Assembly: GCA_013239625.1 (NCBI GenBank)
Contig: MU057352.1
Span: 32,247,277 to 32,311,276 of the forward strand
DNA length: 64,000 nt
Origin: Lama guanicoe
Lineage: Eukaryota
Reading direction: 5' to 3'
This document shows positions 1 to 57,807 of the stretch, piece after piece. The first letter of the stretch is position 1. The number at the start of each line of letters is the position of its first letter. The notes below the pieces were generated by a model that saw only the letters and a list, made by a program, of their open reading frames with translations, did not search any database and was not told the origin of the DNA. Position numbers and translations under genes: made by a program.

Positions 1-2582
1 ACTTAAAAAGCAAACAGGAGGGTCCCTAGTATCCCCATTAATACACAAATAAACCTAATTACCACCCTCGCTGCCCAAAAAAAGCAAACAGTAGGATGGG
101 TGGGGAAGGGGGGAGAAACAAGCAGAAACGGGGGGCCAGAGGAGGTGGAGGCAAGGCTGGGAGGGGAACCCTCAGAACCTGGTTTAGCCAGATATTTGAG
201 GGAAGCGAAGTAGAAAGCCCAGGGATGCGTCCCCAGGTTGCCAGCCTGAGTCGTCGGGTGGCTGTCGGGGCTGCTCATCCGTTCAGCTACTCATTGTTCC
301 ATTCAGCCATCCATCCGCTCACCCACACACCCTCCTGAAGACCAGCCGTCAGCAGAAGAGCCCTGCCTCCCAGGCCTGGGAACAGGTATGGCCACCCTGT
401 GTTCTGGGCCTGGGCGCTGGGCTCAGAGAGGTTAACCGACTGGCCCCAGGCTTCACAGATGGTGTGGGGCAGATCTGAGGTTCAGGCTTCCATGACCTCC
501 TCCCCAGCTATTGTCACAAGTCACGCTGCTGCCCAGACGTGCCAGGAGTGTATGGGGGTGGGTAGGGAGGCCCCGAGTGAGTCAGGCACAGCCCTCAGGG
601 AATTCACAGCTTGGGGTGGGAGGGAGGTCAGAAATCCACGGCCCTCCTGGCAGGGAGAAGTCTCAGGGTGCAGCTACAGGGAAGGGCCTCGGAGCCAGGG
701 GGCACTTCAGGACCCTGGACAGCACCCGCAGTCCGCGTCCTGGGCTTCGCGGCTCAGCACAGCCTCACCGCCTGTCCCGCTCAGCGGGACAGCAGCCCTC
801 CCCGGCCCTTGTGGGGAGCCAGGGGTCACACTCAGGCTGTGTGGATTGGCTCATGTGACCCTCGCCCAGACCTGACAGCAGGTCCTGTCAACACCCAGTT
901 CTGCAGTTGAGGAGGTGGCTCAAGGAGCCAAAGTGACCGCCCAAAGCTGCCAGCTCGTGAGCTGGATTCAGCAGGATTTGAACCTGGCACCAGGCAGAAG
1001 AGCCCACGCGGAACGCTCCACACCCTCCCAGAAGGGCCGGCGCAGCCGAGCAAGACGTGCCCTGAGTGCACTCTGCCCTCCTTGCACACCCAGGTCCCCA
1101 CACGAAGACCAGTGGGGACTGAGTCCCGGCGAACCATCTGCAGAGATCTGGGCCCGTGAGGAACACAGTGGCTGGGGTCAGGCAGGGCTGGCTTCAAATC
1201 CATCCTCATGCCACAGCCTGACCATGGGACCTGGGGCACATCGCTGGCCTCCCAGGCTCCGGGTGCTCTCCCAGCAGTACAGCCCAGTGACGGGACCCAG
1301 CACTGACCTCGTGCTGGCCGCCTGCCTGGGTGTGCCCATGCCCGCCCAGCCCAGCCCAGATCAAACTTCCTGGGACCCTCAAGATGGCCACGTGCTGGAC
1401 GGTGGCCAAGTGCCTTTGGGGTGTGATCTGCACTCAGTTCCGTCCCTCCCTGGCCCCCTCACATCTACCCTCCCCCACCTCATCCCACCTCCAGGTTGAA
1501 CAGAGGATGGGAGGGGAGGCAGGGAAAGCTGAGAGCCACAGAGGCAGCCAAAGGGACCTGACTGAGGTGGAGAATGATCCCAAGAGAAGTAGGAGAGGGC
1601 ACCTGAAGAGGAAGGGGGGAGGCAGGGGATGTCCTGGACCCTCCAGGAAGGGCCACACCCCGTCTCTGACAAGCCTGGCTCCTTCTCGTCCCTTCTCTCC
1701 CCCCAGCAAAATGCGCTGGGCCTCTCAGCTGACTTCAAGGGGAAGAGGCAGGCGGGTGATGACAGGCAGGTCCCAGGGACCAGGAGATGCTCGGGCTAGG
1801 ACATATGGTGGAGACAGAGGCAGGCCTTTGATGAGGCACTCTCCAGCCCTGGCGCCCAGCTCCCCTCCTGGCACAAGACAGAGCTCCCCCCACCAACCTG
1901 TCTGCTTCAGCCCCCAGCATCTGCAGCCTCCCCCACAGGTGGGAGCGCCCCTGCAGAGGAAGCAGTTCCTGAGGGGGCTGGGCTGCCCAGAGCTACCGGC
2001 CTCATCCCAGCTCACCCAGCAGTGAGAGCTGGAGTCAGGGAGCAGCCCAGGTCCCTCGGCTGGGCCTGGATGGGGGGCGCAGAGGCTACGCCTCCCTCCA
2101 ACAGGAGCAGCCAGTGAGGCAGGAGCCCCACCCCGAGCTCCCCAGCAGGCAGCTGTCCCAGCCAGGGCCTGACTGATGGGCTGACCTTTCTGGCTCCCCG
2201 ATGAAAATGTATCGACCGCCTCCATGACCTTCTGGTGAAGCGTGGAGGAGACTTCCTGAAGGAGGCAGGATGGGTTTTCCTGTTAACATTACTGCGTCCG
2301 ACAAGGGGGAGGGTCCTGAAAAGGCCCCTTGAGGTGCTAAGAGCTGGCACCACTTTTAAAGGCAGGAGGGGCCCAGAGATGTCGGCAGGGGCTGCTGGAT
2401 GGACGGTCAGGGCCTCGGGCCCCTTGAACCCCCTAATCCCAGAGCTGGGGAGATGCCCTTGTCCACATTAAGGTCTCATGACCCCACACTGGGGGCACTG
2501 CCCTGTCCCAGCCAGTGGTCAGAGGGAGAGAGAGCTCTGGAGGACACCAGGACACCAACGTGGGACATCCAGTGGGACATTC

Positions 2583-17351: not shown

Positions 17352-17652
17352 TCCCACCATGATCACCACNNNNNNNNNNNNNNNNNNNNNNNNNNNNNNN
17401 NNNNNNNNNNNNNNNNNNNNNNNNNNNNNNNNNNNNNNNNNNNNNNNNNNNNNNNNNNNNNNNNNNNNNNNNNNNNNNNNNNNNNNNNNNNNNNNNNNNN
17501 NNNNNNNNNNNNNNNNNNNNNNNNNNNNNNNNNNNNNNNACCATCGGCACCATCAGCACCATCACCACCACCACCATCACCATCAGCACCATCACCACCA
17601 TCACCTTCAGCACCATCAGCACCGTCACCATCAGCACCATCACCACCATCAG
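17352..17652. repeat. (CAC/CAT/CAG)n imperfect trinucleotide repeat spanning the gap
   Basis: caccatcagcaccatcaccaccac units after the gap; a short caccatgatcaccac before it. Confidence 0.9.
17370..17539. other. Assembly gap (170 N)
   Basis: Run of n characters flanked by CAC/CAT repeat. Confidence 1.
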
Positions 17653-17659
17653 AACCAGT

Positions 17660-28164: not shown

Positions 28165-28745
28165 CTAGACCTCCTCCTCCACCTTCAGGATCATCCCTGA
28201 GAAGACTTCCAGGCCCGTGGGGGTGCCCTGGGGGGCTCCATCCGGCCCACAGGCTGTTCCGCCCCCAAGGGGGCCGTCAGGGATGGGGGGCGAGGCACCC
28301 AGGGCCGGGCGGGCCTCCACCAGCCTCTCCAGCGTTCGGTTGAGGGCCTCGACACCGTCGGCCAGCCTCTGGCTCTGCTCAGCCAGCCTCTGCAGCAGTG
28401 CATTCTGCTGGGCCATCAGCGTGCTCTGCTGCTGGGACCAGGAGCGCAGCACGGCACCCTGTCGCCGCTGGGAGTCCAGGAGCCTCCGCTCAAACTCTGA
28501 GGCCTCGGCCACCGCGGGCTTCCCCAAGGGCTGGGGTGCTACAGAGGTGGGTGGCGAGGGCCGGGAAGCCCCAGGGAATGCGGCCGCCGGGGGCGCTGAG
28601 GCTGGGGAGGCGGGTGGAGAGGGTGAGGAAGTGGCAGCAGGGTAGGCTCCTCGGAGGTCCAGGGGGTCGGCTTCGGGCAGGCTCGGCCCATCCAGTGTCC
28701 GCAGGGGCAGCCACAGGCAGCTGGGGGCCTCGTCCTCCTCGTCTG
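28165..28745 (-). CDS. Nested Myb/SANT-like protein, terminal coding exon (acidic/Pro-rich linker, PLDLR, coiled coil, ...MILKVEEEV stop)
   Basis: Acceptor gtctccccctgctag|cag| (NAGNAG, both phase 1) is in frame with the 35133 donor. 581 nt open to TAG. Heptad-rich EFERRLLDSQRRQ...LADGVEALNRTLERLVEA, typical of MSANTD/NAIF1-type C-termini. CpG-rich. Confidence 0.78.
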
Positions 28746-28974
28746 CTAGCAGGGGGAGACAGGAAACGTGAGCCCCATGGCCCAGGACTGGGAGGGCCAG
28801 GAGGGGCCACTCGCAGACGGTCCTGCACGTGCAGATATGGGGGTCTCGAGGGGCCCCTCTGTGGTGGCCAGCTGCACCCTCACCAGGACACCAAAGAGAG
28901 GGCGAAAGACTTCCTCCAGTAACGCCGAGACTGAAACTCAACCTGGCGGCTCCCAAGCCGGAATGCTACCACCA

Positions 28975-31623: not shown

Positions 31624-31706
31624 TTGGTGCCGGCTGGCTCCGGCCAGGAGCTCGCTGGCCGCCTCTGTGTGTGAGGACACAGCCTCAAGGCCGGCTTCAA
31701 TACTAT
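31624..31706 (-). CDS. TSNARE1: TSNARE1 SNARE-motif C-terminal exon, (D)SIEAGLEAVSSHTEAASELLAGASRHQ
   Basis: Acceptor cttgatttgcag| and donor |gtaagt. 83 nt, phase 1 to 0. G+AT restores the D of 'IDSIE'. Read manually; it is not in the ORF track. Confidence 0.95.
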
Positions 31707-34700
31707 CTGCAAATCAAGACAACAGAAGCAGTTACAGAGTGGGGACCCTGGGGTCACCCGAGGGCGAGCCTGGGGAGCCCAGCCTGGGGCCGCGGGGGGC
31801 GGAAGCAGACAGCATCTGACCCCCTGGTGGTCACTCGGAGGCCCAGGCAGGAAGCCCAGCCTTCAGAGAAGCAGAGGCGGCAAGGATAGAGCACCGGCCG
31901 GGCCGAGCTGTAGGGCAGGGAGCCTGGAAGCACCCCCTTGGGGCAGCAGCAGCCCACTCAAGACAGGGTGCGGGCCTGGCTCTGCTACAACTCTGCACCC
32001 TGGGGGCGACTGCACAGGCTCACAGAGCGGCTGTGAAGACAGCGTGACGGGGTCTGCGAACACCCTCCTCTGCGCGCTGGCCATGGGTGTCCGGGCCCTG
32101 ATCAGCCGGTTCTGACTACCGTGCGGGGCTGAGTGGGGGACCAGGGAATTCGCCTGGTAGGTGTGTCAACACAGCCCCCAAGATGTCACACCAGCAGCAC
32201 ACCTGAGCTGCTGACGAGGTCCAGGGGCTGCCCGCGGAAACCTGAAGATTTCGCTCAGCGATGCCAGCGGTTAAAAGGCAGCATCATGTAAACCATGCAC
32301 CAGACCCGTCCCCACCCCACCGCCGAGGGGCATGCAGGGTAGTGGGGAGTTAGGGCTGCGGCACTCGACCCTGCAAGGAACCGGGTTTGAATCCAGGTGA
32401 GGACCCCCCTGCGCAGTGTCTTCTACCAATGAATGGGAAAGAGCCCCGTGCCCGCAGATGAGCAGCTGAGAGCCCGCAGCCAGGGGCGCTGCCCTCAGCA
32501 CAGACCAGCTGCTGCCGCTGCACCAGACGCAGTAACACGTGAAATGAACTCTTCCAGGAAGAGCAGACACGCCTCCAAATTCACACATTTTCAGAGCTCT
32601 GGAGGCAGAAATGGCTGGATTCAAATCACTCCTCTTCCTGCAGCTGTGCACCTGGGCGCCGCCCGAGGCCTGAGGCCGGCAAGGTCCCCTCAAAGGCGGG
32701 AACCGCCCCGGCTCGGCGTCCTGAGGCCCCGTGGGTGTGCTCCCCACCAGGAGAGGGTGTGGGCGGGCCCTCCTGGAGCTGGGGCCTGCAGGGTGCCTTT
32801 GCCGCCTGCCAGGGGCGCAGGCCTCCCGTGGTGCCTCTCCAGCCAGCCTAGATGAGGAAGAAGGAACGCAGCTGCCCCGAGGCAGGACCAGCCCTGCGGG
32901 GGGTCGGGGGAGGGCACCCACCCAGGCCCCCGCCCCTGCCACCACCAACAACGTGACTAGGAGCTACCTTGTGCTCCAGACTCTGTCGGCAACAACCTGG
33001 CGGAGCCCCGACACAGAGAGAGGTGGCTGTGCCTGGCGGGCAGCAGTGTCTGGGCCAGCCGTGAGCTGGGGTCACACTCCTAGCTGGCTTTTCGCTCTGA
33101 CCTGCAACCACACACGCTCTGGGCTGCGCGGGGACCTGCCCTCAGACTGCCCAGCCCTGGTCTGCACCGAGTCGGCGCCCCGCGGCAGGGAGCCTGACTC
33201 TGATGGTAGCGTACATCCCAGAGGCAAGCGCCCCCGGCGGCCAAGGTGCACACAGCCCAGAGAACAAACGTCCTGTGGCCCCAGGGCTGGATCGCAGATC
33301 TGCTCAGCCCCCAGATCACACACGGCTCCACCCTGGGACACCGTACAAGCAGACCCCTGGCTCGTGGCCAGCGACCCTCTCCTGGGCCCTGGGGGCTGCC
33401 AGGCAAGCGGGGGCACCCCACCACACGGCCTATGGTGCTGACGCCTCATTGGCCGCGGGCCACCCCCTTCACCTCGTCATAAAGATTCCAGGTTGACCGG
33501 GGACAGCCCTGCAAAGCCCAGTCCAAGTGGGGGGAACCCAGGCACAGGCACCCCTGGGGGGCCCTACACGCGGCCAGCGGGCTTTCCTCAGCCCTACAGC
33601 CGGGAGATGCCCGTACGCCGGGATCGTGCCTCAGCCCCAGGCCAGTGCCGACCCAGAGGGCAGCGCTGGCGGGGCTGGGCCTCCAGCTGTGGTCTCCACC
33701 ATCACCCCCAAAACCAGGCGCTGCAGCCACTTCCCTGCTTGGCCTTAGCCTCACCCCACGTTGCTCTCACACATTTAACAAATCTCAGGACCCGTCGGCA
33801 CGGTGTCGGCCACTCCCCACAGAGCTCACAGCACTAAGGGACCAGCCGGTTGGCTGCCCTGATGGAGGAGAGCCCGGGAGGGGAGCCATGGGGTCTGGCG
33901 GAGGGGGCACTGGCCCACCAGGGTGGACAGGAAGCCTTCTGAGCCAAGCACCACACCCAGGGGACAAGCGCAGTCGCAAGCTCCCACCTCACTCCAGGGC
34001 TGGGGGCTCATGGGAAGGTCGGAGCACCCAGGGCCACACCCATGCTGCCCGCTGCCCGCCCTTCAGCACCCCAAAACCAGGTCTGGCTATGCCTGTAGGA
34101 GAGCGGGTGGCCTCCCCAGGACTAACAGGTGGGCCCCACCCCACCCCATCATTCAGGCCCACGACCAAGCCCAGCCCAGGGCACGGGCACGTCGGGGTCT
34201 GCCTGCATCTCTGACTGGCCCAGGCTTGCTCTGCACAGACCCCCCACTAGAAGGTCTGCTGGGGCCTCTGTTGGTGGCATCTGGGGCCTCTGCTTGTCCC
34301 CACGAGGCTGAGTCCTGCTGTCCACTCTGCAGCCCTCAAGAGGGAGGTGGTCCTGCTTCTGGCTTCATCCTCAGTCTTCCCAGCAGCTCCCCAGGAAGGG
34401 GTGGGGAAGGGTCCAGCAGGACTCAGCTCTGAGCTGTGGGCGGAGCCGCTGCATGCAGACAGCAGGTGAAGGGCGCTCCTGACGAGGTTCAGAGGTGTCT
34501 TGAGGAGGAGGACGAGGAGCAGGCGGAGCGGGCAGGAGGAGGCGCTGCAGGCGGCAGGAGTGAGCCAGCCCTGCCCCGGAGTCAGAGGCACTGTGCCACC
34601 CGCGTCTTCTTCACCAGGTACAGACCCTTCTGAAAAGGTGGGCCCTGGAGGTGGGCCCACGGGCTCCGAGGGGATCAGCCTGCCCTAGGAAGCTAAGAGC

Positions 34701-35132
34701 CTCCAGATAGCGCTCTGGCCTGGCCTGGTCTGGGGGCTGCGACCCGGGGAGAGGGGCCCCCACAATGAGGGGGTCAGAGGGAGGGTGCGGTCACCCCTAC
34801 TCCCTCCCCTACACCCAAGATAGGGCACACAGCGGGCAGGGAGCTGAGCTGAGCTGGGCTGGTGACGGCTTTCCACGAGCAGTCCAGCGATTCACCTGCA
34901 CCTCAGCTCCTGTGGGTTTCTGGAGGCTGGTGGCCGCACTGTCACATGGGACAACCCCAGATGCCCCCAAGCCCGGGCCAGGGCCGACCTGACTCAGCCT
35001 CAGCTCCTGCACTCCCTGGTTTTGAGCCTCCATGCCCCCATCTAGATGCCAAGGGGCCTCCGCTCTCCCCTAATCTTGCTCTCGGCGGTCATGCGCTGGA
35101 AGCCCCTTGCAGGCGGTGAAGGGACCACTTAC

Positions 35133-35538
35133 TTGGCAGCGGCTCTGCGGCCTGGCCCTCGCCCGGGGGGCCCGGGACTGCGAAGGTCTCGGCCACCATG
35201 CGCTCGACGGGCGTGAGCACGGGGCCAGGGGCCCGGGGCCGCTCGGCCAGCTTCCGGCGCACCACGCCGCGCAGGTCCCGCCACTTGTGCTTGACGTCGC
35301 CCAGGTCCCGGCGGCAGTAGCCCAGTGCGTTCACCGCCTGCAGGATGCGGCTCCACACGCGATGCTTCCGGGCGGGCGGGCCCCGCAGCGCCCCGAACAG
35401 CAGCGGGTAGTGGCGCGTGACCCTCTGCACCAGCACCTCTGTCTCCTGGGGGCTGAAGTTGGGCTTCCGGGTCTTGGTGCGGGAGTGGGAGCTCGGCCGC
35501 AGGGGCACGCAGCCCGGCCCGGACAGCAGGGCCGCCAT
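35133..35538 (-). CDS. Nested Myb/SANT-like DNA-binding protein, coding exon 1 (Myb_DNA-bind_5/MSANTD/NAIF1-like). The full exon, from the upstream acceptor, spans 35133-35591.
   Basis: Strong Kozak gccATGG at 35538. Encodes RKPNFSPQETEVLVQRV...LLFG...RVWSRILQAVNALGYCRRDLGDVKHKWRDLRGVVRRKL, with the F/W/W Myb-SANT pattern. CpG-rich. Donor A|gtaagt (phase 1); upstream acceptor cctttccag| at 35591. Confidence 0.88.
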
Positions 35539-36847
35539 GGCCGGCTCGGGGCTGGAGCTCCGCTGGCATGTGGCTTGGCTGCTTCTGGACCCTGGAAAGG
35601 CACCAGAGGCTGAGTGGGCAGCAGATGGGACGGGCCATGGAGAGCAGGGAACCCCCAGAATCCTGGTCCCAGGCCCCCACTGCCCCCTGGAGAGGGTACA
35701 GTGGCCCCAGCCCAACGTCCATCACCCTAGAAACACCCACATCAGGGGGCAGTGGGGTCCTGGCTCCTGGCTACTCTGGTCCCCAGGTGCCCACCCCTCC
35801 GCCGGGCCCCTACACGGTTGCAGCAGGTCAGCCCTCTCCACCTCCCCACCGGGAGACGATCCCTTCCTGATCGTCCAGGAGCAGGACTGAGTGACCATCT
35901 GTAGACACCGGGGCATCCATCTGGAGTGTACAAAGCATTTTGCACACACCGCCCCAAGACAGCCAGCCAGAGGTGGAGGGGGGGGTCCTGCAAGAGGTGC
36001 TGTGAAGGGGTGACGGGGCGGCCCCACTGGAGCTGCCCAGGCTGAGGAGCGGGATCCCGTGGGAGCGAGGAGAAGCCTGCCAGCGTCACGGCCCAACCCT
36101 GTCCAGTCGCCCTCCTAGGGCAGGGGGGCGGCTGGGCTGCCCGCCAGGGAACAGCACATGCCTGGACCTCAGAAGCTCCACGGCACCCAGGCTGAGAGGC
36201 GAGAGGCTTATTCACAGCCGCGGGGCCCCTGGTGAGGCAACAGCTCAGCCCGGGAACAGGTAGAGAGGCTGGGTGGGTGAGCCCTGGGGTCCTGGCCGGG
36301 AGCTGACTGTTGGCAAGTGGCTCTGGGGACCAGGAGCCACTCTTCTAGGCCAGAGGGTGGTGAGTTCCTGCTCGGGCGCCCAGGGCGCTCAGGAGAAGCC
36401 ATATGGCCGCAGGGTGTGGGCACCGGGCTGGTGGGGCGGAGGCTCTCACGTGGAAGGAACAGCAGGAACAACGGCTCGTCCTGCACAGCCCTGTCCCCAC
36501 CACCCACGTTTCCTGAGAAGTGGCTGACGTGGTGAATCAGCAGCAGGATCGGCACTCCACGGTGGTGCCACGTCCAGCGCCCTCCGCTGGGGCACCCACT
36601 GCAGTCTGACGCCCCCCAGACAGCTGGTCCTCACCCTGGGGAGCCCCTGGCTGAGGAGGAAGGCCCAGGGCAGGGGGCACACAGGCCAGCGCTCCTCAGT
36701 GAGGAGAAGGGGCGGGCCAACCTCTGGCCTGGGTCTCCCTTGCCCGGCCTTCCTGAGGGGCTGGGGAGACACTCAGACCCCAGAAGCCGCCCCAGCCCCA
36801 CACCGGGGGGAGGGGCAGGTGGCCTGACAGATGGCGTGGGTACCCAC

Positions 36848-36920
36848 CGATGGCGTCTCCTTGCTCTGACACCATGGAGGCCAAGTCCTTGATGATCTGG
36901 TTCACATCCAGCAGGTCGCT
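36848..36920 (-). CDS. TSNARE1: TSNARE1 SNARE-motif exon, SDLLDVNQIIKDLASMVSEQGDAI(G)
   Basis: Acceptor gtttccacag| and donor |gtgggt. 73 nt, phase 0 to 1. Contains the Qa zero-layer 'EQG'. Confidence 0.96.
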
Positions 36921-47761: not shown

Positions 47762-48103
<342 letters not shown>

Positions 48104-55019: not shown

Positions 55020-55079
55020 CTGCCGTCTGCCACCCCTCTGTGCCGTGGGAAGCAGGGCTCTGGACTTCTCTGCAATTTT
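55020..55079 (-). CDS. TSNARE1: TSNARE1 internal coding exon, KIAEKSRALLPTAQRGGRRQ
   Basis: Acceptor ttcttgtactttgtccaacag| and donor |gtgggt. 60 nt, phase 0-0, in frame with both neighbours. Confidence 0.92.
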
Positions 55080-55573
55080 CTGTTGGACAAAGTACAAGAA
55101 GAGGGAGAGAGGAAGAACAGAAAAGGTGAGGAAGAGAGCAGCAGCGTCAGATAAACATGACGTACTGGACCACGGCCGACGGAGAGCACAGCTCCAGCCC
55201 CAAGAAGAGAGCCGCCCCACGTGTCAGGAAAGCTGGGAGCCGGGCCGGGCTCGGCAGGCGCTCTGCTAGACGGCCTCCTCCACACACCCGGGCTCTCTGG
55301 GGCTGTTTCCTCACCTGTCAGGACGAGGGATACCTGCTGTCCCCCCTCCCAAGAGGCCGTCGCAAGGACTGTCCTGGGCCGTGCTCCAGAAGTCAAAGAG
55401 CCCTCGCTGCATGCGCCGCGGCCGCACCAGCGGGACCCCGGCGGCTGCTATGCGTCTGCAGGGCTGCCCGTCCTCTGCTTCAGGGGATGGGACCATGCCA
55501 GGCTGACCGAGCGAGTGCTCAGGGGACCAAGCCCACCCCACCTGCCCGGCAACCTCACCTGCAGGTGCCTCAC

Positions 55574-55648
55574 CTTCTGCACCACTCCATAGCGCTGGAC
55601 GGCATCTAAGAGCTGAGTTTTCAGGCAGTCCAGCTGCAGGCGCTCCTG
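55574..55648 (-). CDS. TSNARE1: TSNARE1 internal coding exon, QERLQLDCLKTQLLDAVQRYGVVQK
   Basis: Polypyrimidine ctctctctgcag| (tandem CAGCAG, alternative start 55645) and donor |gtgagg. 75 nt, phase 0-0. Syntaxin Hc-helix-like peptide. Confidence 0.93.
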
Positions 55649-57716: not shown

Positions 57717-57807
57717 CCGGGAGCAGCCCCGCAGGAGCTCGGCCATCTGCTTCAGGGCGCTGGTGCTGGCTGCAACGGTTTGGTTGGTCTCCTGCTGTGC
57801 CGCATGC
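57717..57807 (-). CDS. TSNARE1: TSNARE1 internal coding exon (syntaxin Habc-like region), (xxG)HAAQQETNQTVAASTSALKQMAELLRGCSR
   Basis: Acceptor cttgccccag| and donor |gtatgt. 91 nt, phase 2 to 0. The peptide matches recalled TSNARE1/STX12-like HTAQQETNKTI...KQMAELLR. Confidence 0.93.

What the first reader, a model, noticed from the sequence alone, without database searches (positions are those of the whole stretch)
31624..36920. Symmetric phase 1-1 Myb exon in the middle of the SNARE motif: a frame-compatible splicing switch
Seen: acceptor cctttccag| at 35591 and donor at 35133 define a stop-free 459-nt (153-codon) exon, phase 1 at both ends. The host intron between the 36848 and 31706 SNARE exons is also phase 1. 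In-frame products therefore include: (a) TSNARE1 with a second Myb domain inserted just after the zero-layer Q; (b) TSNARE1 ...EQGDAI-Myb-coiled coil; (c) ...EQGDAI spliced directly to the 28745 exon; and (d) Myb joined to the C-terminal half of the SNARE motif. Inference: splicing could switch the locus between a fusion-competent SNARE and SNARE-disrupted, transmembrane-less or nuclear proteins.
Basis: partly seen in the sequence, partly recalled or inferred. Interest (0 to 1): 0.78.

Follow-up and report, generated by a model that had tools for sequence, protein, structure and literature searches.

The report
Second Myb exon inside TSNARE1

Summary
Exon 35591..35133 (minus strand, 459 nt, AG/GT sites, phase 1-1) is open and encodes a full Myb_DNA-bind_5 domain (E 9.3e-20). 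It lies in the phase-1 intron that splits the SNARE motif.

It is not new. 123 of 123 public TSNARE1 models examined join exon 11 directly to this exon. These include Vicugna and Camelus models whose exons are almost identical to the window, so the window is from a camelid. Product (c) appears in one ab initio camel model; product (d) appears in none.

The Myb exon plus the 28745 exon (one long helix) form an old module: a tortoise model has it alone, and amphibian and turtle TSNARE1 models carry the same C-terminal exon behind a different Myb.

The in-exon ATG is kept in only 7 of 51 distinct sequences, which argues against a conserved stand-alone gene.

In public models, exon 12 reads the 28745 exon in another frame, giving a non-membrane tail.

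The scan noted the same stretch in this genome before (s1-861110, s1-861121).

The parts
36848..36920 (-). TSNARE1 exon 11 type: N-terminal half of the SNARE motif (..SDLLDVNQIIKDLASMVSEQGDAI + first base of a split codon), 73 nt, donor in phase 1
35133..35591 (-). The finding: 459-nt phase 1-1 exon ('Myb-B'). Layout: 40-residue linker, Myb_DNA-bind_5 domain, 36-residue tail
35245..35469 (-). Myb_DNA-bind_5 domain proper (residues 41-115 of the exon translation)
   Evidence: 67 of 79 residues identical to tortoise P0003
35592..35609 (-). 18-nt in-frame extension if the upstream acceptor ctcag|CCTCTG is used. The equivalent acceptor is used in three dog or dingo models (..GDAI-ASGAFPG..)
35536..35538 (-). 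In-exon ATG (start of a possible stand-alone 328-aa ORF). Met at this column in only 7 of 51 distinct exon sequences
31624..31706 (-). TSNARE1 exon 12 type: C-terminal half of the SNARE motif, 83 nt. It starts in phase 1 and ends in phase 0
28165..28745 (-). Shared 3' coding exon ('CC exon'). In the frame reached from phase-1 donors it encodes 192 residues ending ..EVFSGMILKVEEEV, with the stop at 28167-28165. It has a tandem acceptor tag|cag| (exon start 28745 or 28742)
28315..28515 (-). Single long helix (residues 77-143 of the CC exon translation, pLDDT 91-99) with invariant hydrophobic residues at 3/4 spacing
28539..28745 (-). The same exon read in the frame reached from exon 12 (phase 0): a 68-residue Pro/Arg-rich tail plus a stop. 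It is 100% identical to the tail of Vicugna isoform X6
47855..48019 (-). Upstream TSNARE1 exon (linker before the SNARE motif). Limits are approximate, taken from tblastn
55020..55648 (-). Two upstream TSNARE1 exons of the syntaxin N-terminal domain (about 55648-55574 and 55091-55020)
57717..57806 (-). Upstream TSNARE1 exon, 30 residues 100% identical to the Vicugna models

Best explanation
The exon is a genuine, conserved, alternatively included coding exon of TSNARE1. It carries a second Harbinger-type Myb/SANT domain (I call it Myb-B).

Together with the large exon at 28745..28165 it forms an old two-exon 'Myb + long helix' module, the build of a domesticated Harbinger Myb-like protein such as NAIF1. 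The helix exon encodes a disordered acidic/Pro-rich stretch, one 67-residue helix and a conserved acidic C-terminus.

In mammals the module has no conserved start codon of its own and is reached by splicing from TSNARE1 exon 11. The exon 11 donor (phase 1) either joins exon 12 and completes the SNARE motif, or joins Myb-B and cuts the motif five residues after the central Gln. The Myb-B donor (phase 1) then joins one of two exons:
- the 28745 exon in its conserved frame, giving N-terminal Myb + syntaxin N-domain + half SNARE + Myb-B + helix, with no membrane anchor;
- exon 12, giving a SNARE motif interrupted by 153 residues.

Shown: the exon, its sites and phases, the domain, its conservation, and that public models in many mammals use these junctions.

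Inferred: that the junctions are used in vivo in this animal, that the products cannot form a SNARE bundle, and that they act as nuclear, DNA-binding, possibly dimeric proteins.
For: Splice sites, length and phases.

Myb domain: (E 9.3e-20).

Conservation: Myb identity to the window is 67/79 for tortoise, 68/79 for a marsupial and 74/79 for an ape. The mean major-residue frequency among mammal sequences is 0.96 in the Myb domain, 0.78 in the upstream linker and 0.72 in the tail.

The tortoise model P0003 (325 aa) maps in two pieces onto exactly these two exons.

One search found 330 proteins at E<=1e-10 among 535 candidates. I examined 119 of the 120 listed plus 4 earlier hits. Exon 11 lies directly upstream in 123 of 123. 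Downstream are exon 12 in 46, the 28745 exon in 70 and something else in 7. The sources are both NCBI and UniProt/Ensembl-type entries.

The Vicugna models X1 and X6 match the window's exons at or near 100%.

The in-exon Met is present in only 7 of 51 distinct sequences, and the linker upstream of it stays in frame and is conserved down to marsupials. The exon is therefore translated from further upstream.

The conserved frame of the 28745 exon (29 invariant columns from amphibians to mammals) can only be entered from a phase-1 donor, that is Myb-B or exon 11.

Models with the exon have two Myb hits and Syntaxin_2 but no SNARE hit, whereas an uninterrupted turtle model has one.

AlphaFold2 gives one helix at residues 77-143 with pLDDT 91-99.
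Against: Gene models are predictions. Pipelines can chain compatible open exons, and many of the 123 are isoforms of the same genes or close species, so they are not independent.

I saw only models that contain the exon (selection by the search). Their share among all TSNARE1 transcripts is unknown.

The one experimental isoform study I could read (bioRxiv 10.1101/2021.02.09.430442, passages read) describes 15 exons and four brain isoforms in human. It does not mention an exon between exons 11 and 12, so inclusion may be rare in brain.

Stand-alone models exist in a tortoise (Myb-B + helix) and in frogs (another Myb + helix). An internal promoter is therefore possible.
Confidence: 0.7

Rival explanations
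1. An independent nested gene. A transcript starts at its own promoter inside TSNARE1 intron 11, is translated from the ATG at 35538, and splices 35133->28745 to give a 328-aa Myb + helix protein. On this view the joins to TSNARE1 exons in public models are pipeline chaining.
For: The ATG is present in the window and the two-exon ORF is intact. The tortoise model P0003 is stand-alone. Frog models of 328-331 aa are stand-alone with another Myb exon. Marsupial models start at an alternative first exon just before exon 11. An elephant model puts a different N-terminus on the helix exon.
Against: Met at that column is present in only 7 of 51 distinct sequences: camelids, horses, one tamarin model and a mouse lemur. 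The rest have V, T or A. The 17 codons upstream of it and the acceptor are conserved in frame down to marsupials. All 123 models join exon 11. This rival can coexist with the main reading in camelids.
Confidence: 0.2
2. An annotation-only exon. The exon is conserved as DNA or as an old relic but is not spliced into stable mRNA today, and the models are artefacts of ORF-driven prediction.
For: No RNA holder is on record. Human brain RT-PCR and sashimi work did not report it. The ORF alone has roughly a 3% chance probability at this GC content (my arithmetic).
Against: Protein-level conservation is far above neutral over roughly 300 million years (67/79 with tortoise). Branches in the Myb-B clade are very short. 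The conserved frame of the 28745 exon needs a phase-1 donor. Models come from more than one annotation source.
Confidence: 0.07
3. A recent duplicate of TSNARE1's own N-terminal Myb exon (exon 4 type) that landed in the intron and is drifting.
For: It is 63% identical to the exon-4 type Myb over 126 residues. In the tree the two types are sister groups, apart from the amphibian/turtle type.
Against: Myb-B is found in a tortoise and in marsupials, and it changes more slowly than the exon-4 type. It is old and constrained rather than recent and drifting.
Confidence: 0.03

Closest known systems
Public predicted TSNARE1 isoforms of camelids (Vicugna pacos X1-X4 and X6; Camelus dromedarius, ferus and bactrianus X3/X6/X7) and of many other mammals
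   Same: They have the same exon, the same acceptor and donor, and the same two onward junctions. The Vicugna exons match the window at or near 100%.
   Different: Nothing of substance differs: one residue in the Myb exon tail and one in the helix exon. These are predictions, and I found no paper that describes them.
TSNARE1 exon-4 Myb-like domain (human tSNARE1b versus tSNARE1c; bioRxiv 10.1101/2021.02.09.430442)
   Same: The Pfam family is the same (PF13873). The two are 63% identical, and both sit on an optional exon of the same gene.
   Different: The exon-4 domain lies near the N-terminus and leaves the SNARE motif whole. Myb-B lies inside the SNARE motif, and including it splits or truncates the motif.
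NAIF1 and the Myb-like protein of Harbinger transposons
   Same: The build is an N-terminal Myb_DNA-bind_5 domain followed by a helical C-terminal region, about 325 aa. Papers trace TSNARE1's Myb to Harbinger (passages of PMC9392472, and the preprint). The Atlas lists a NAIF1 cluster for the helix exon at 0.80, which is a lead only.
   Different: Kinship of the helix exon with NAIF1 or with transposon proteins was not tested by alignment here. In mammals the module has no conserved start of its own and hangs on a SNARE gene.
Amphibian and turtle TSNARE1 isoforms (e.g. Bombina X2, Ambystoma X3, Mauremys X4)
   Same: They carry the same C-terminal helix exon (58-68% identity to the tortoise query) behind a Myb exon, and they lack a membrane anchor.
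   Different: Their Myb ('Myb-C') is only 33-35% identical to Myb-B. It follows a complete SNARE motif (after exon 12) and leaves no trace in the window.
Inhibitory SNAREs (i-SNARE idea applied to anchor-less tSNARE1 in the preprint)
   Same: The products lack a transmembrane anchor.
   Different: The i-SNARE isoforms keep a whole SNARE motif. Products containing Myb-B do not.

Membership tests
Myb_DNA-bind_5 (PF13873) Myb/SANT-like domain | Profile match above Pfam's gathering score over the whole domain | tested here: met
   70.8 bits against a cut-off of 21.7, E 9.3e-20, profile positions 1-77 of 78
Myb_DNA-bind_5 (PF13873) Myb/SANT-like domain | Three-helix fold and DNA binding | not tested
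   The Myb exon was not folded, and there is no binding assay
Harbinger Myb-like-derived genes (NAIF1, MSANTD family, TSNARE1 exon 4) | Closest kin among host genes is a known Harbinger-derived Myb | tested here: met
   63% identity over 126 aa to the exon-4 type Myb of TSNARE1; sister groups in the tree
Harbinger Myb-like-derived genes (NAIF1, MSANTD family, TSNARE1 exon 4) | [quoted passage not shown] | not tested
   No transposon protein was at hand. This rests on Smith et al. 2012 as cited in passages read; that paper itself is not held
Alternatively included (cassette) coding exon | AG acceptor, GT donor, length a multiple of three, and the same phase as the host intron | tested here: met
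Alternatively included (cassette) coding exon | Transcripts both with and without the exon | not testable with these tools
Only public models show the exon present or absent
Qa-SNARE (syntaxin-type) protein | Uninterrupted SNARE motif recognised by PF05739 | tested here: not met
   no SNARE hit at E<=0.01 in Vicugna X6 (exon inserted) or X1 (exon then helix exon). The uninterrupted turtle model P0028 has one (E 3.2e-10)
Qa-SNARE (syntaxin-type) protein | C-terminal transmembrane anchor | tested here: inconclusive
   no convincing match to the 31-aa anchor tails of three models anywhere in the window (best E 0.36, at the window's edge). The exon may lie outside the window
Coiled-coil domain | Long helix with a heptad pattern, forming oligomers | tested here: inconclusive
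   Helix 77-143 at pLDDT 91-99. Invariant L88, L99, W102, L109, L117, L127, V131, L134 and L138 at 3/4 spacing. A monomer model cannot show pairing
Independent nested gene | Conserved start codon of its own | tested here: not met
   Met present in 7 of 51 distinct exon sequences
Dual-frame (overprinted) exon | The same DNA translated in two frames in different isoforms | tested here: met
   At the level of public models only. The Vicugna X6 tail maps to 28745..28542 in one frame and Vicugna X1 maps to 28743..28168 in another

The most novel reading that the evidence does not exclude
The anciently selected product of the 3' half of the TSNARE1 locus may be the Myb-B + long-helix protein, a NAIF1-like Harbinger-derived nuclear factor that mammals translate as an extension of half a SNARE protein.

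The 'non-transmembrane C-terminal domain' that defines the dominant tSNARE1 isoforms would then be an out-of-frame reading of that conserved helix exon. One exon would serve two proteins in two frames, and only one of the frames is old. Disease-associated variation at this locus might then act through the Myb-B/helix isoforms as well as through the SNARE isoforms.
Probability: 0.3. Interest if true: 0.65.

Novelty: already known. Interest (0 to 1): 0.38.

Why it matters
TSNARE1 is a well-supported schizophrenia risk gene. Work on its function has dealt with four brain isoforms that keep a whole SNARE motif (preprint read).

If the isoforms containing Myb-B are really made, the gene also produces proteins with two Myb domains, half a SNARE motif and a conserved helix. 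Their job is more likely nuclear than membrane-trafficking.

The frame relation at the 28745 exon would also change how the 'non-TM domain' is viewed. It would be a frame-shifted by-product rather than an evolved domain.

In my five searches of the held library I found no paper on either point.

As a finding for this scan, however, the exon and its junctions are already in public annotation of the same animal family.

Tried and rejected
Read evidence. The look-up of sequencing runs listed 24 runs, and no listed holder of the exon is on record as RNA.

Solved structures by sequence: nothing useful, best E 0.44.

A second Myb in the window: none.

A relic of the amphibian/turtle Myb-C between exon 12 and the 28745 exon: none.

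A transmembrane exon in the window: no convincing hit.

Pfam on the helix exon: no family.

Atlas on the helix exon: the best hit is 0.89 to an unnamed chordate cluster, and NAIF1 scores 0.80. These are leads only.

The tree could not date the split between the exon-4 type and Myb-B. Support for the Myb-B clade including the tortoise is 94/31.

Frame comparison on the first 35 codons of the 28745 exon in 7 species: 14 columns vary in the conserved frame against 20 in the other frame. One row was out of register by an indel, so this is weak.

Smith et al. 2012 (PMC3278475) is not held.

Of the hits I saw the search listing only, and no title looked relevant.

Rejected readings: a chance ORF (Pfam match and conservation) and a recent drifting duplicate (tortoise and marsupial orthologues).

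The joined step was left out. I never joined the window's exons into a spliced protein for any search or fold. The Myb exon and the helix exon were searched and folded separately. Where a longer query was needed I used database proteins (P0003, P0037).

Full report
THE OBSERVATION

The gene runs on the minus strand. One search shows the acceptor ...cctttccag|G, with the first exon base at 35591, and the donor ...CCAA|gtaagt, with the last exon base at 35133. The exon is 459 nt. The frame that starts at 35589 is open for 152 codons. With two bases in front and one behind, the exon is phase 1 at both ends.

Exon 11 (36920..36848, 73 nt) begins in phase 0 and ends one base into a codon. Exon 12 begins at 31706 with the two bases that complete that codon.

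An open frame alone would be weak evidence. GC is 0.68 here, my arithmetic gives about a 3% chance of 153 stop-free codons, and one search lists several overlapping 150-200 aa ORFs in other frames. The deciding results are two:
- Pfam gives Myb_DNA-bind_5 at 70.8 bits (cut-off 21.7), E 9.3e-20, covering profile positions 1-77 of 78.
- The domain shares 67 of 79 residues with a tortoise protein.

Only one Myb domain lies in the window.

READ EVIDENCE

For that reason exon 12 is documented only and by matches to its other part.

WHAT THE PROTEIN DATABASE SHOWS

Search with the exon: 7 hits among 14 candidates, with 229 sample-only candidates left out. The hits include:
- a monk-seal model that is exactly exon 11 - Myb exon - exon 12;
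- a 325-aa stand-alone tortoise protein, P0003.

P0003 maps onto the window in two pieces. Residues 15-138 map to the Myb exon at 73% identity. Residues 138-325 map to 28749..28168 at 39% identity, ending in the same ..EVFSGMILKVEEE motif. The 28745 exon therefore belongs with the Myb exon.

Search with the C-terminal part of P0003: 32 hits among 53 candidates, 144 left out. This exon turns out to be the C-terminus of many TSNARE1 models (sequences read):
- Amphibian and turtle isoforms of about 530-560 aa have a complete SNARE motif, then a different Myb exon (Myb-C, 33-35% identical to ours), then this exon.
- Frogs also have stand-alone Myb-C + helix models of about 328 aa.
- A dog model (isoform X14) and two marsupial models have exon 11 - Myb-B - helix exon.
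- One ab initio wild-camel model has exon 11 joined directly to the helix exon.

Search with the Myb-B part of the dog model: 330 proteins at E<=1e-10 among 535 candidates, 120 listed, 1185 left out. Nearly all are named TSNARE1 isoforms. They come from carnivores, whales, pigs, cattle, camelids, horses and primates, from NCBI and from UniProt entries.

I classified 119 of the 120 listed (leaving out the human row) plus four earlier hits:
- Exon 11 lies directly upstream of the Myb exon in 123 of 123.
- By the strict pattern, downstream came exon 12 in 45, the helix exon in 56 and 'other' in 22.
- Reading the 22 printed rows by eye: 14 are the helix exon with variant first residues, 1 is a variant exon 12, 1 reads through the donor to a stop, and 6 go to other exons.
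- The totals are 46 to exon 12, 70 to the helix exon and 7 elsewhere.

These models are not independent. Many are isoforms of one gene or come from close species, and I saw only models that contain the exon.

THE ANIMAL

The Vicugna models X1 and X6 match the window at 100% in several exons, and with one residue of difference each in the Myb exon and the helix exon. The Camelus models differ slightly more. The window is therefore from the family Camelidae, nearest to the Vicugna models.

IS IT A SEPARATE GENE?

The window has an ATG 17 codons into the exon. That would give a 328-aa stand-alone protein, the reading of the earlier scan note s1-861110.

In an alignment of 51 distinct exon sequences (127 exon regions), Met stands at that column in only 7: camelids, horses, a tamarin model and a mouse lemur. 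The others have V (34), T (6), A (2) or a gap (2).

The linker upstream of that column stays in frame and is recognisably conserved down to marsupials (..SPSPEPA..). The mean major-residue frequency is 0.78 for the linker, 0.96 for the Myb domain and 0.72 for the tail.

This argues that in mammals the exon is translated from further upstream, as an internal exon. An internal promoter in addition is not excluded. The marsupial models start at an alternative first exon just before exon 11, and an elephant model puts another N-terminus on the helix exon.

THE 28745 EXON

One search shows a tandem acceptor tag|cag|, so the exon starts at 28745 or 28742. This fits pairs of camelid isoforms that differ by one residue at the junction (..P-TDEEDE.. 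against ..P-NEEDE..).

From a phase-1 donor (Myb-B or exon 11) the exon reads in the conserved frame: 192 residues with the stop at 28167-28165. An alignment of 18 sequences from amphibians to mammals has 29 invariant columns. They are concentrated in residues 85-139 and in the last ten residues.

AlphaFold2 on that alignment gives one helix, residues 77-143, at pLDDT 91-99. The rest is disordered, with a mean pLDDT of 66. The invariant hydrophobic residues fall at 3/4 spacing. 'Coiled coil' is plausible, but a monomer model cannot prove it. Pfam finds nothing in this exon. The Atlas gives only leads, with a NAIF1 cluster at 0.80.

Exon 12 is 83 nt and ends in phase 0, so it enters the same exon in another frame. 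The tail of Vicugna X6 after exon 12 (68 residues, Pro/Arg-rich) maps at 100% to 28745..28542, followed by a stop.

Across mammals the tail in this frame varies in length:
- 68 residues in Vicugna;
- 105-115 in carnivores, whales, horses and cattle;
- 124-192 in most primate models.

Only three of the models had a transmembrane tail (31 residues), and I found no convincing match to it in the window.

[quoted passage not shown] This probably corresponds to that second frame. That is my inference from non-human models, and I did not look at human sequence.

EFFECT ON THE SNARE MOTIF

Vicugna X6 (exon inserted) and X1 (exon followed by the helix exon) each give two Myb hits and Syntaxin_2 in Pfam, but no SNARE hit at E<=0.01. 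An uninterrupted turtle model gives a SNARE hit. That such proteins cannot enter a four-helix SNARE bundle is inference.

RELATION OF THE MYB EXONS

The tree of 26 Myb segments puts Myb-C far from the other two. The exon-4 type and Myb-B are sister groups. The Myb-B clade includes the tortoise and the marsupials (support 94/31) and has very short branches. Myb-B is old and constrained. When the exon-4 type split from it is not resolved. This agrees with scan note s1-861121, which calls it a paralogue of the N-terminal Myb exon.

LITERATURE

Five full-text searches found no paper that describes a Myb exon inside the SNARE motif or the two-frame use of the last coding exon.
- I read passages of the tSNARE1 preprint, of PMC9392472 and of PMC13639004.
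- Smith et al. 2012 is not held.

VERDICT

Products (a) and (b) are exactly what public annotation already predicts in this animal family and many others. Product (c) rests on one ab initio model, and (d) on none. A regulated switch is untested.

The better description is an old Myb + helix module embedded in TSNARE1 and reached from exon 11. As a discovery it is already known to the databases. The unpublished points of interest are the module's age and the frame relation at the last exon.

Noticed in passing
window 28165-28745 (minus strand): The same exon is read in two frames in public models. The deeply conserved helix frame is entered from the Myb exon or exon 11. A Pro/Arg-rich frame is entered from exon 12, and its length varies from 68 to 192 residues among mammals. 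The second frame probably equals the 'non-TM exon 13' of the literature.
   Followed up: partly
window 28742-28748 (minus strand): Tandem acceptor tag|cag| (NAGNAG type). Camelid isoform pairs differing by one residue at this junction fit the use of both sites.
   Followed up: partly
window 28530-28540 (minus strand): A possible internal phase-0 acceptor (..caccccag|CCC) would bring exon 12 into the conserved helix frame. A Carettochelys turtle model uses an equivalent site. No mammal model I saw does.
   Followed up: no
window 1-28164: No convincing transmembrane-anchor exon of TSNARE1 was found downstream of the helix exon. The best tblastn hit has E 0.36 at 86..36, at the window's edge.
   Followed up: partly
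window 17370-17657: An N run at 17370-17539 is followed directly by a Pro/Ser-rich simple repeat in translation (17541-17657).
   Followed up: no
database proteins P0011, P0014, P0015, P0021 (turtles, amphibians): A third kind of Myb exon (Myb-C) sits after the complete SNARE motif in amphibian and turtle TSNARE1 models. It also occurs in stand-alone models of about 328 aa. It leaves no trace in the camelid window.
   Followed up: partly
database proteins P0032, P0033 (marsupials): These models begin with a short alternative first exon and then run exon 11 - Myb-B - helix exon. That hints at an internal promoter upstream of exon 11.
   Followed up: no
runs X15-X18: Four small libraries (60-88 million letters) of unknown kind, from the window's species label, hold all 42 sampled words of the exon. 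That would be unlikely for shallow whole-genome data and suggests RNA or capture data.
   Followed up: no
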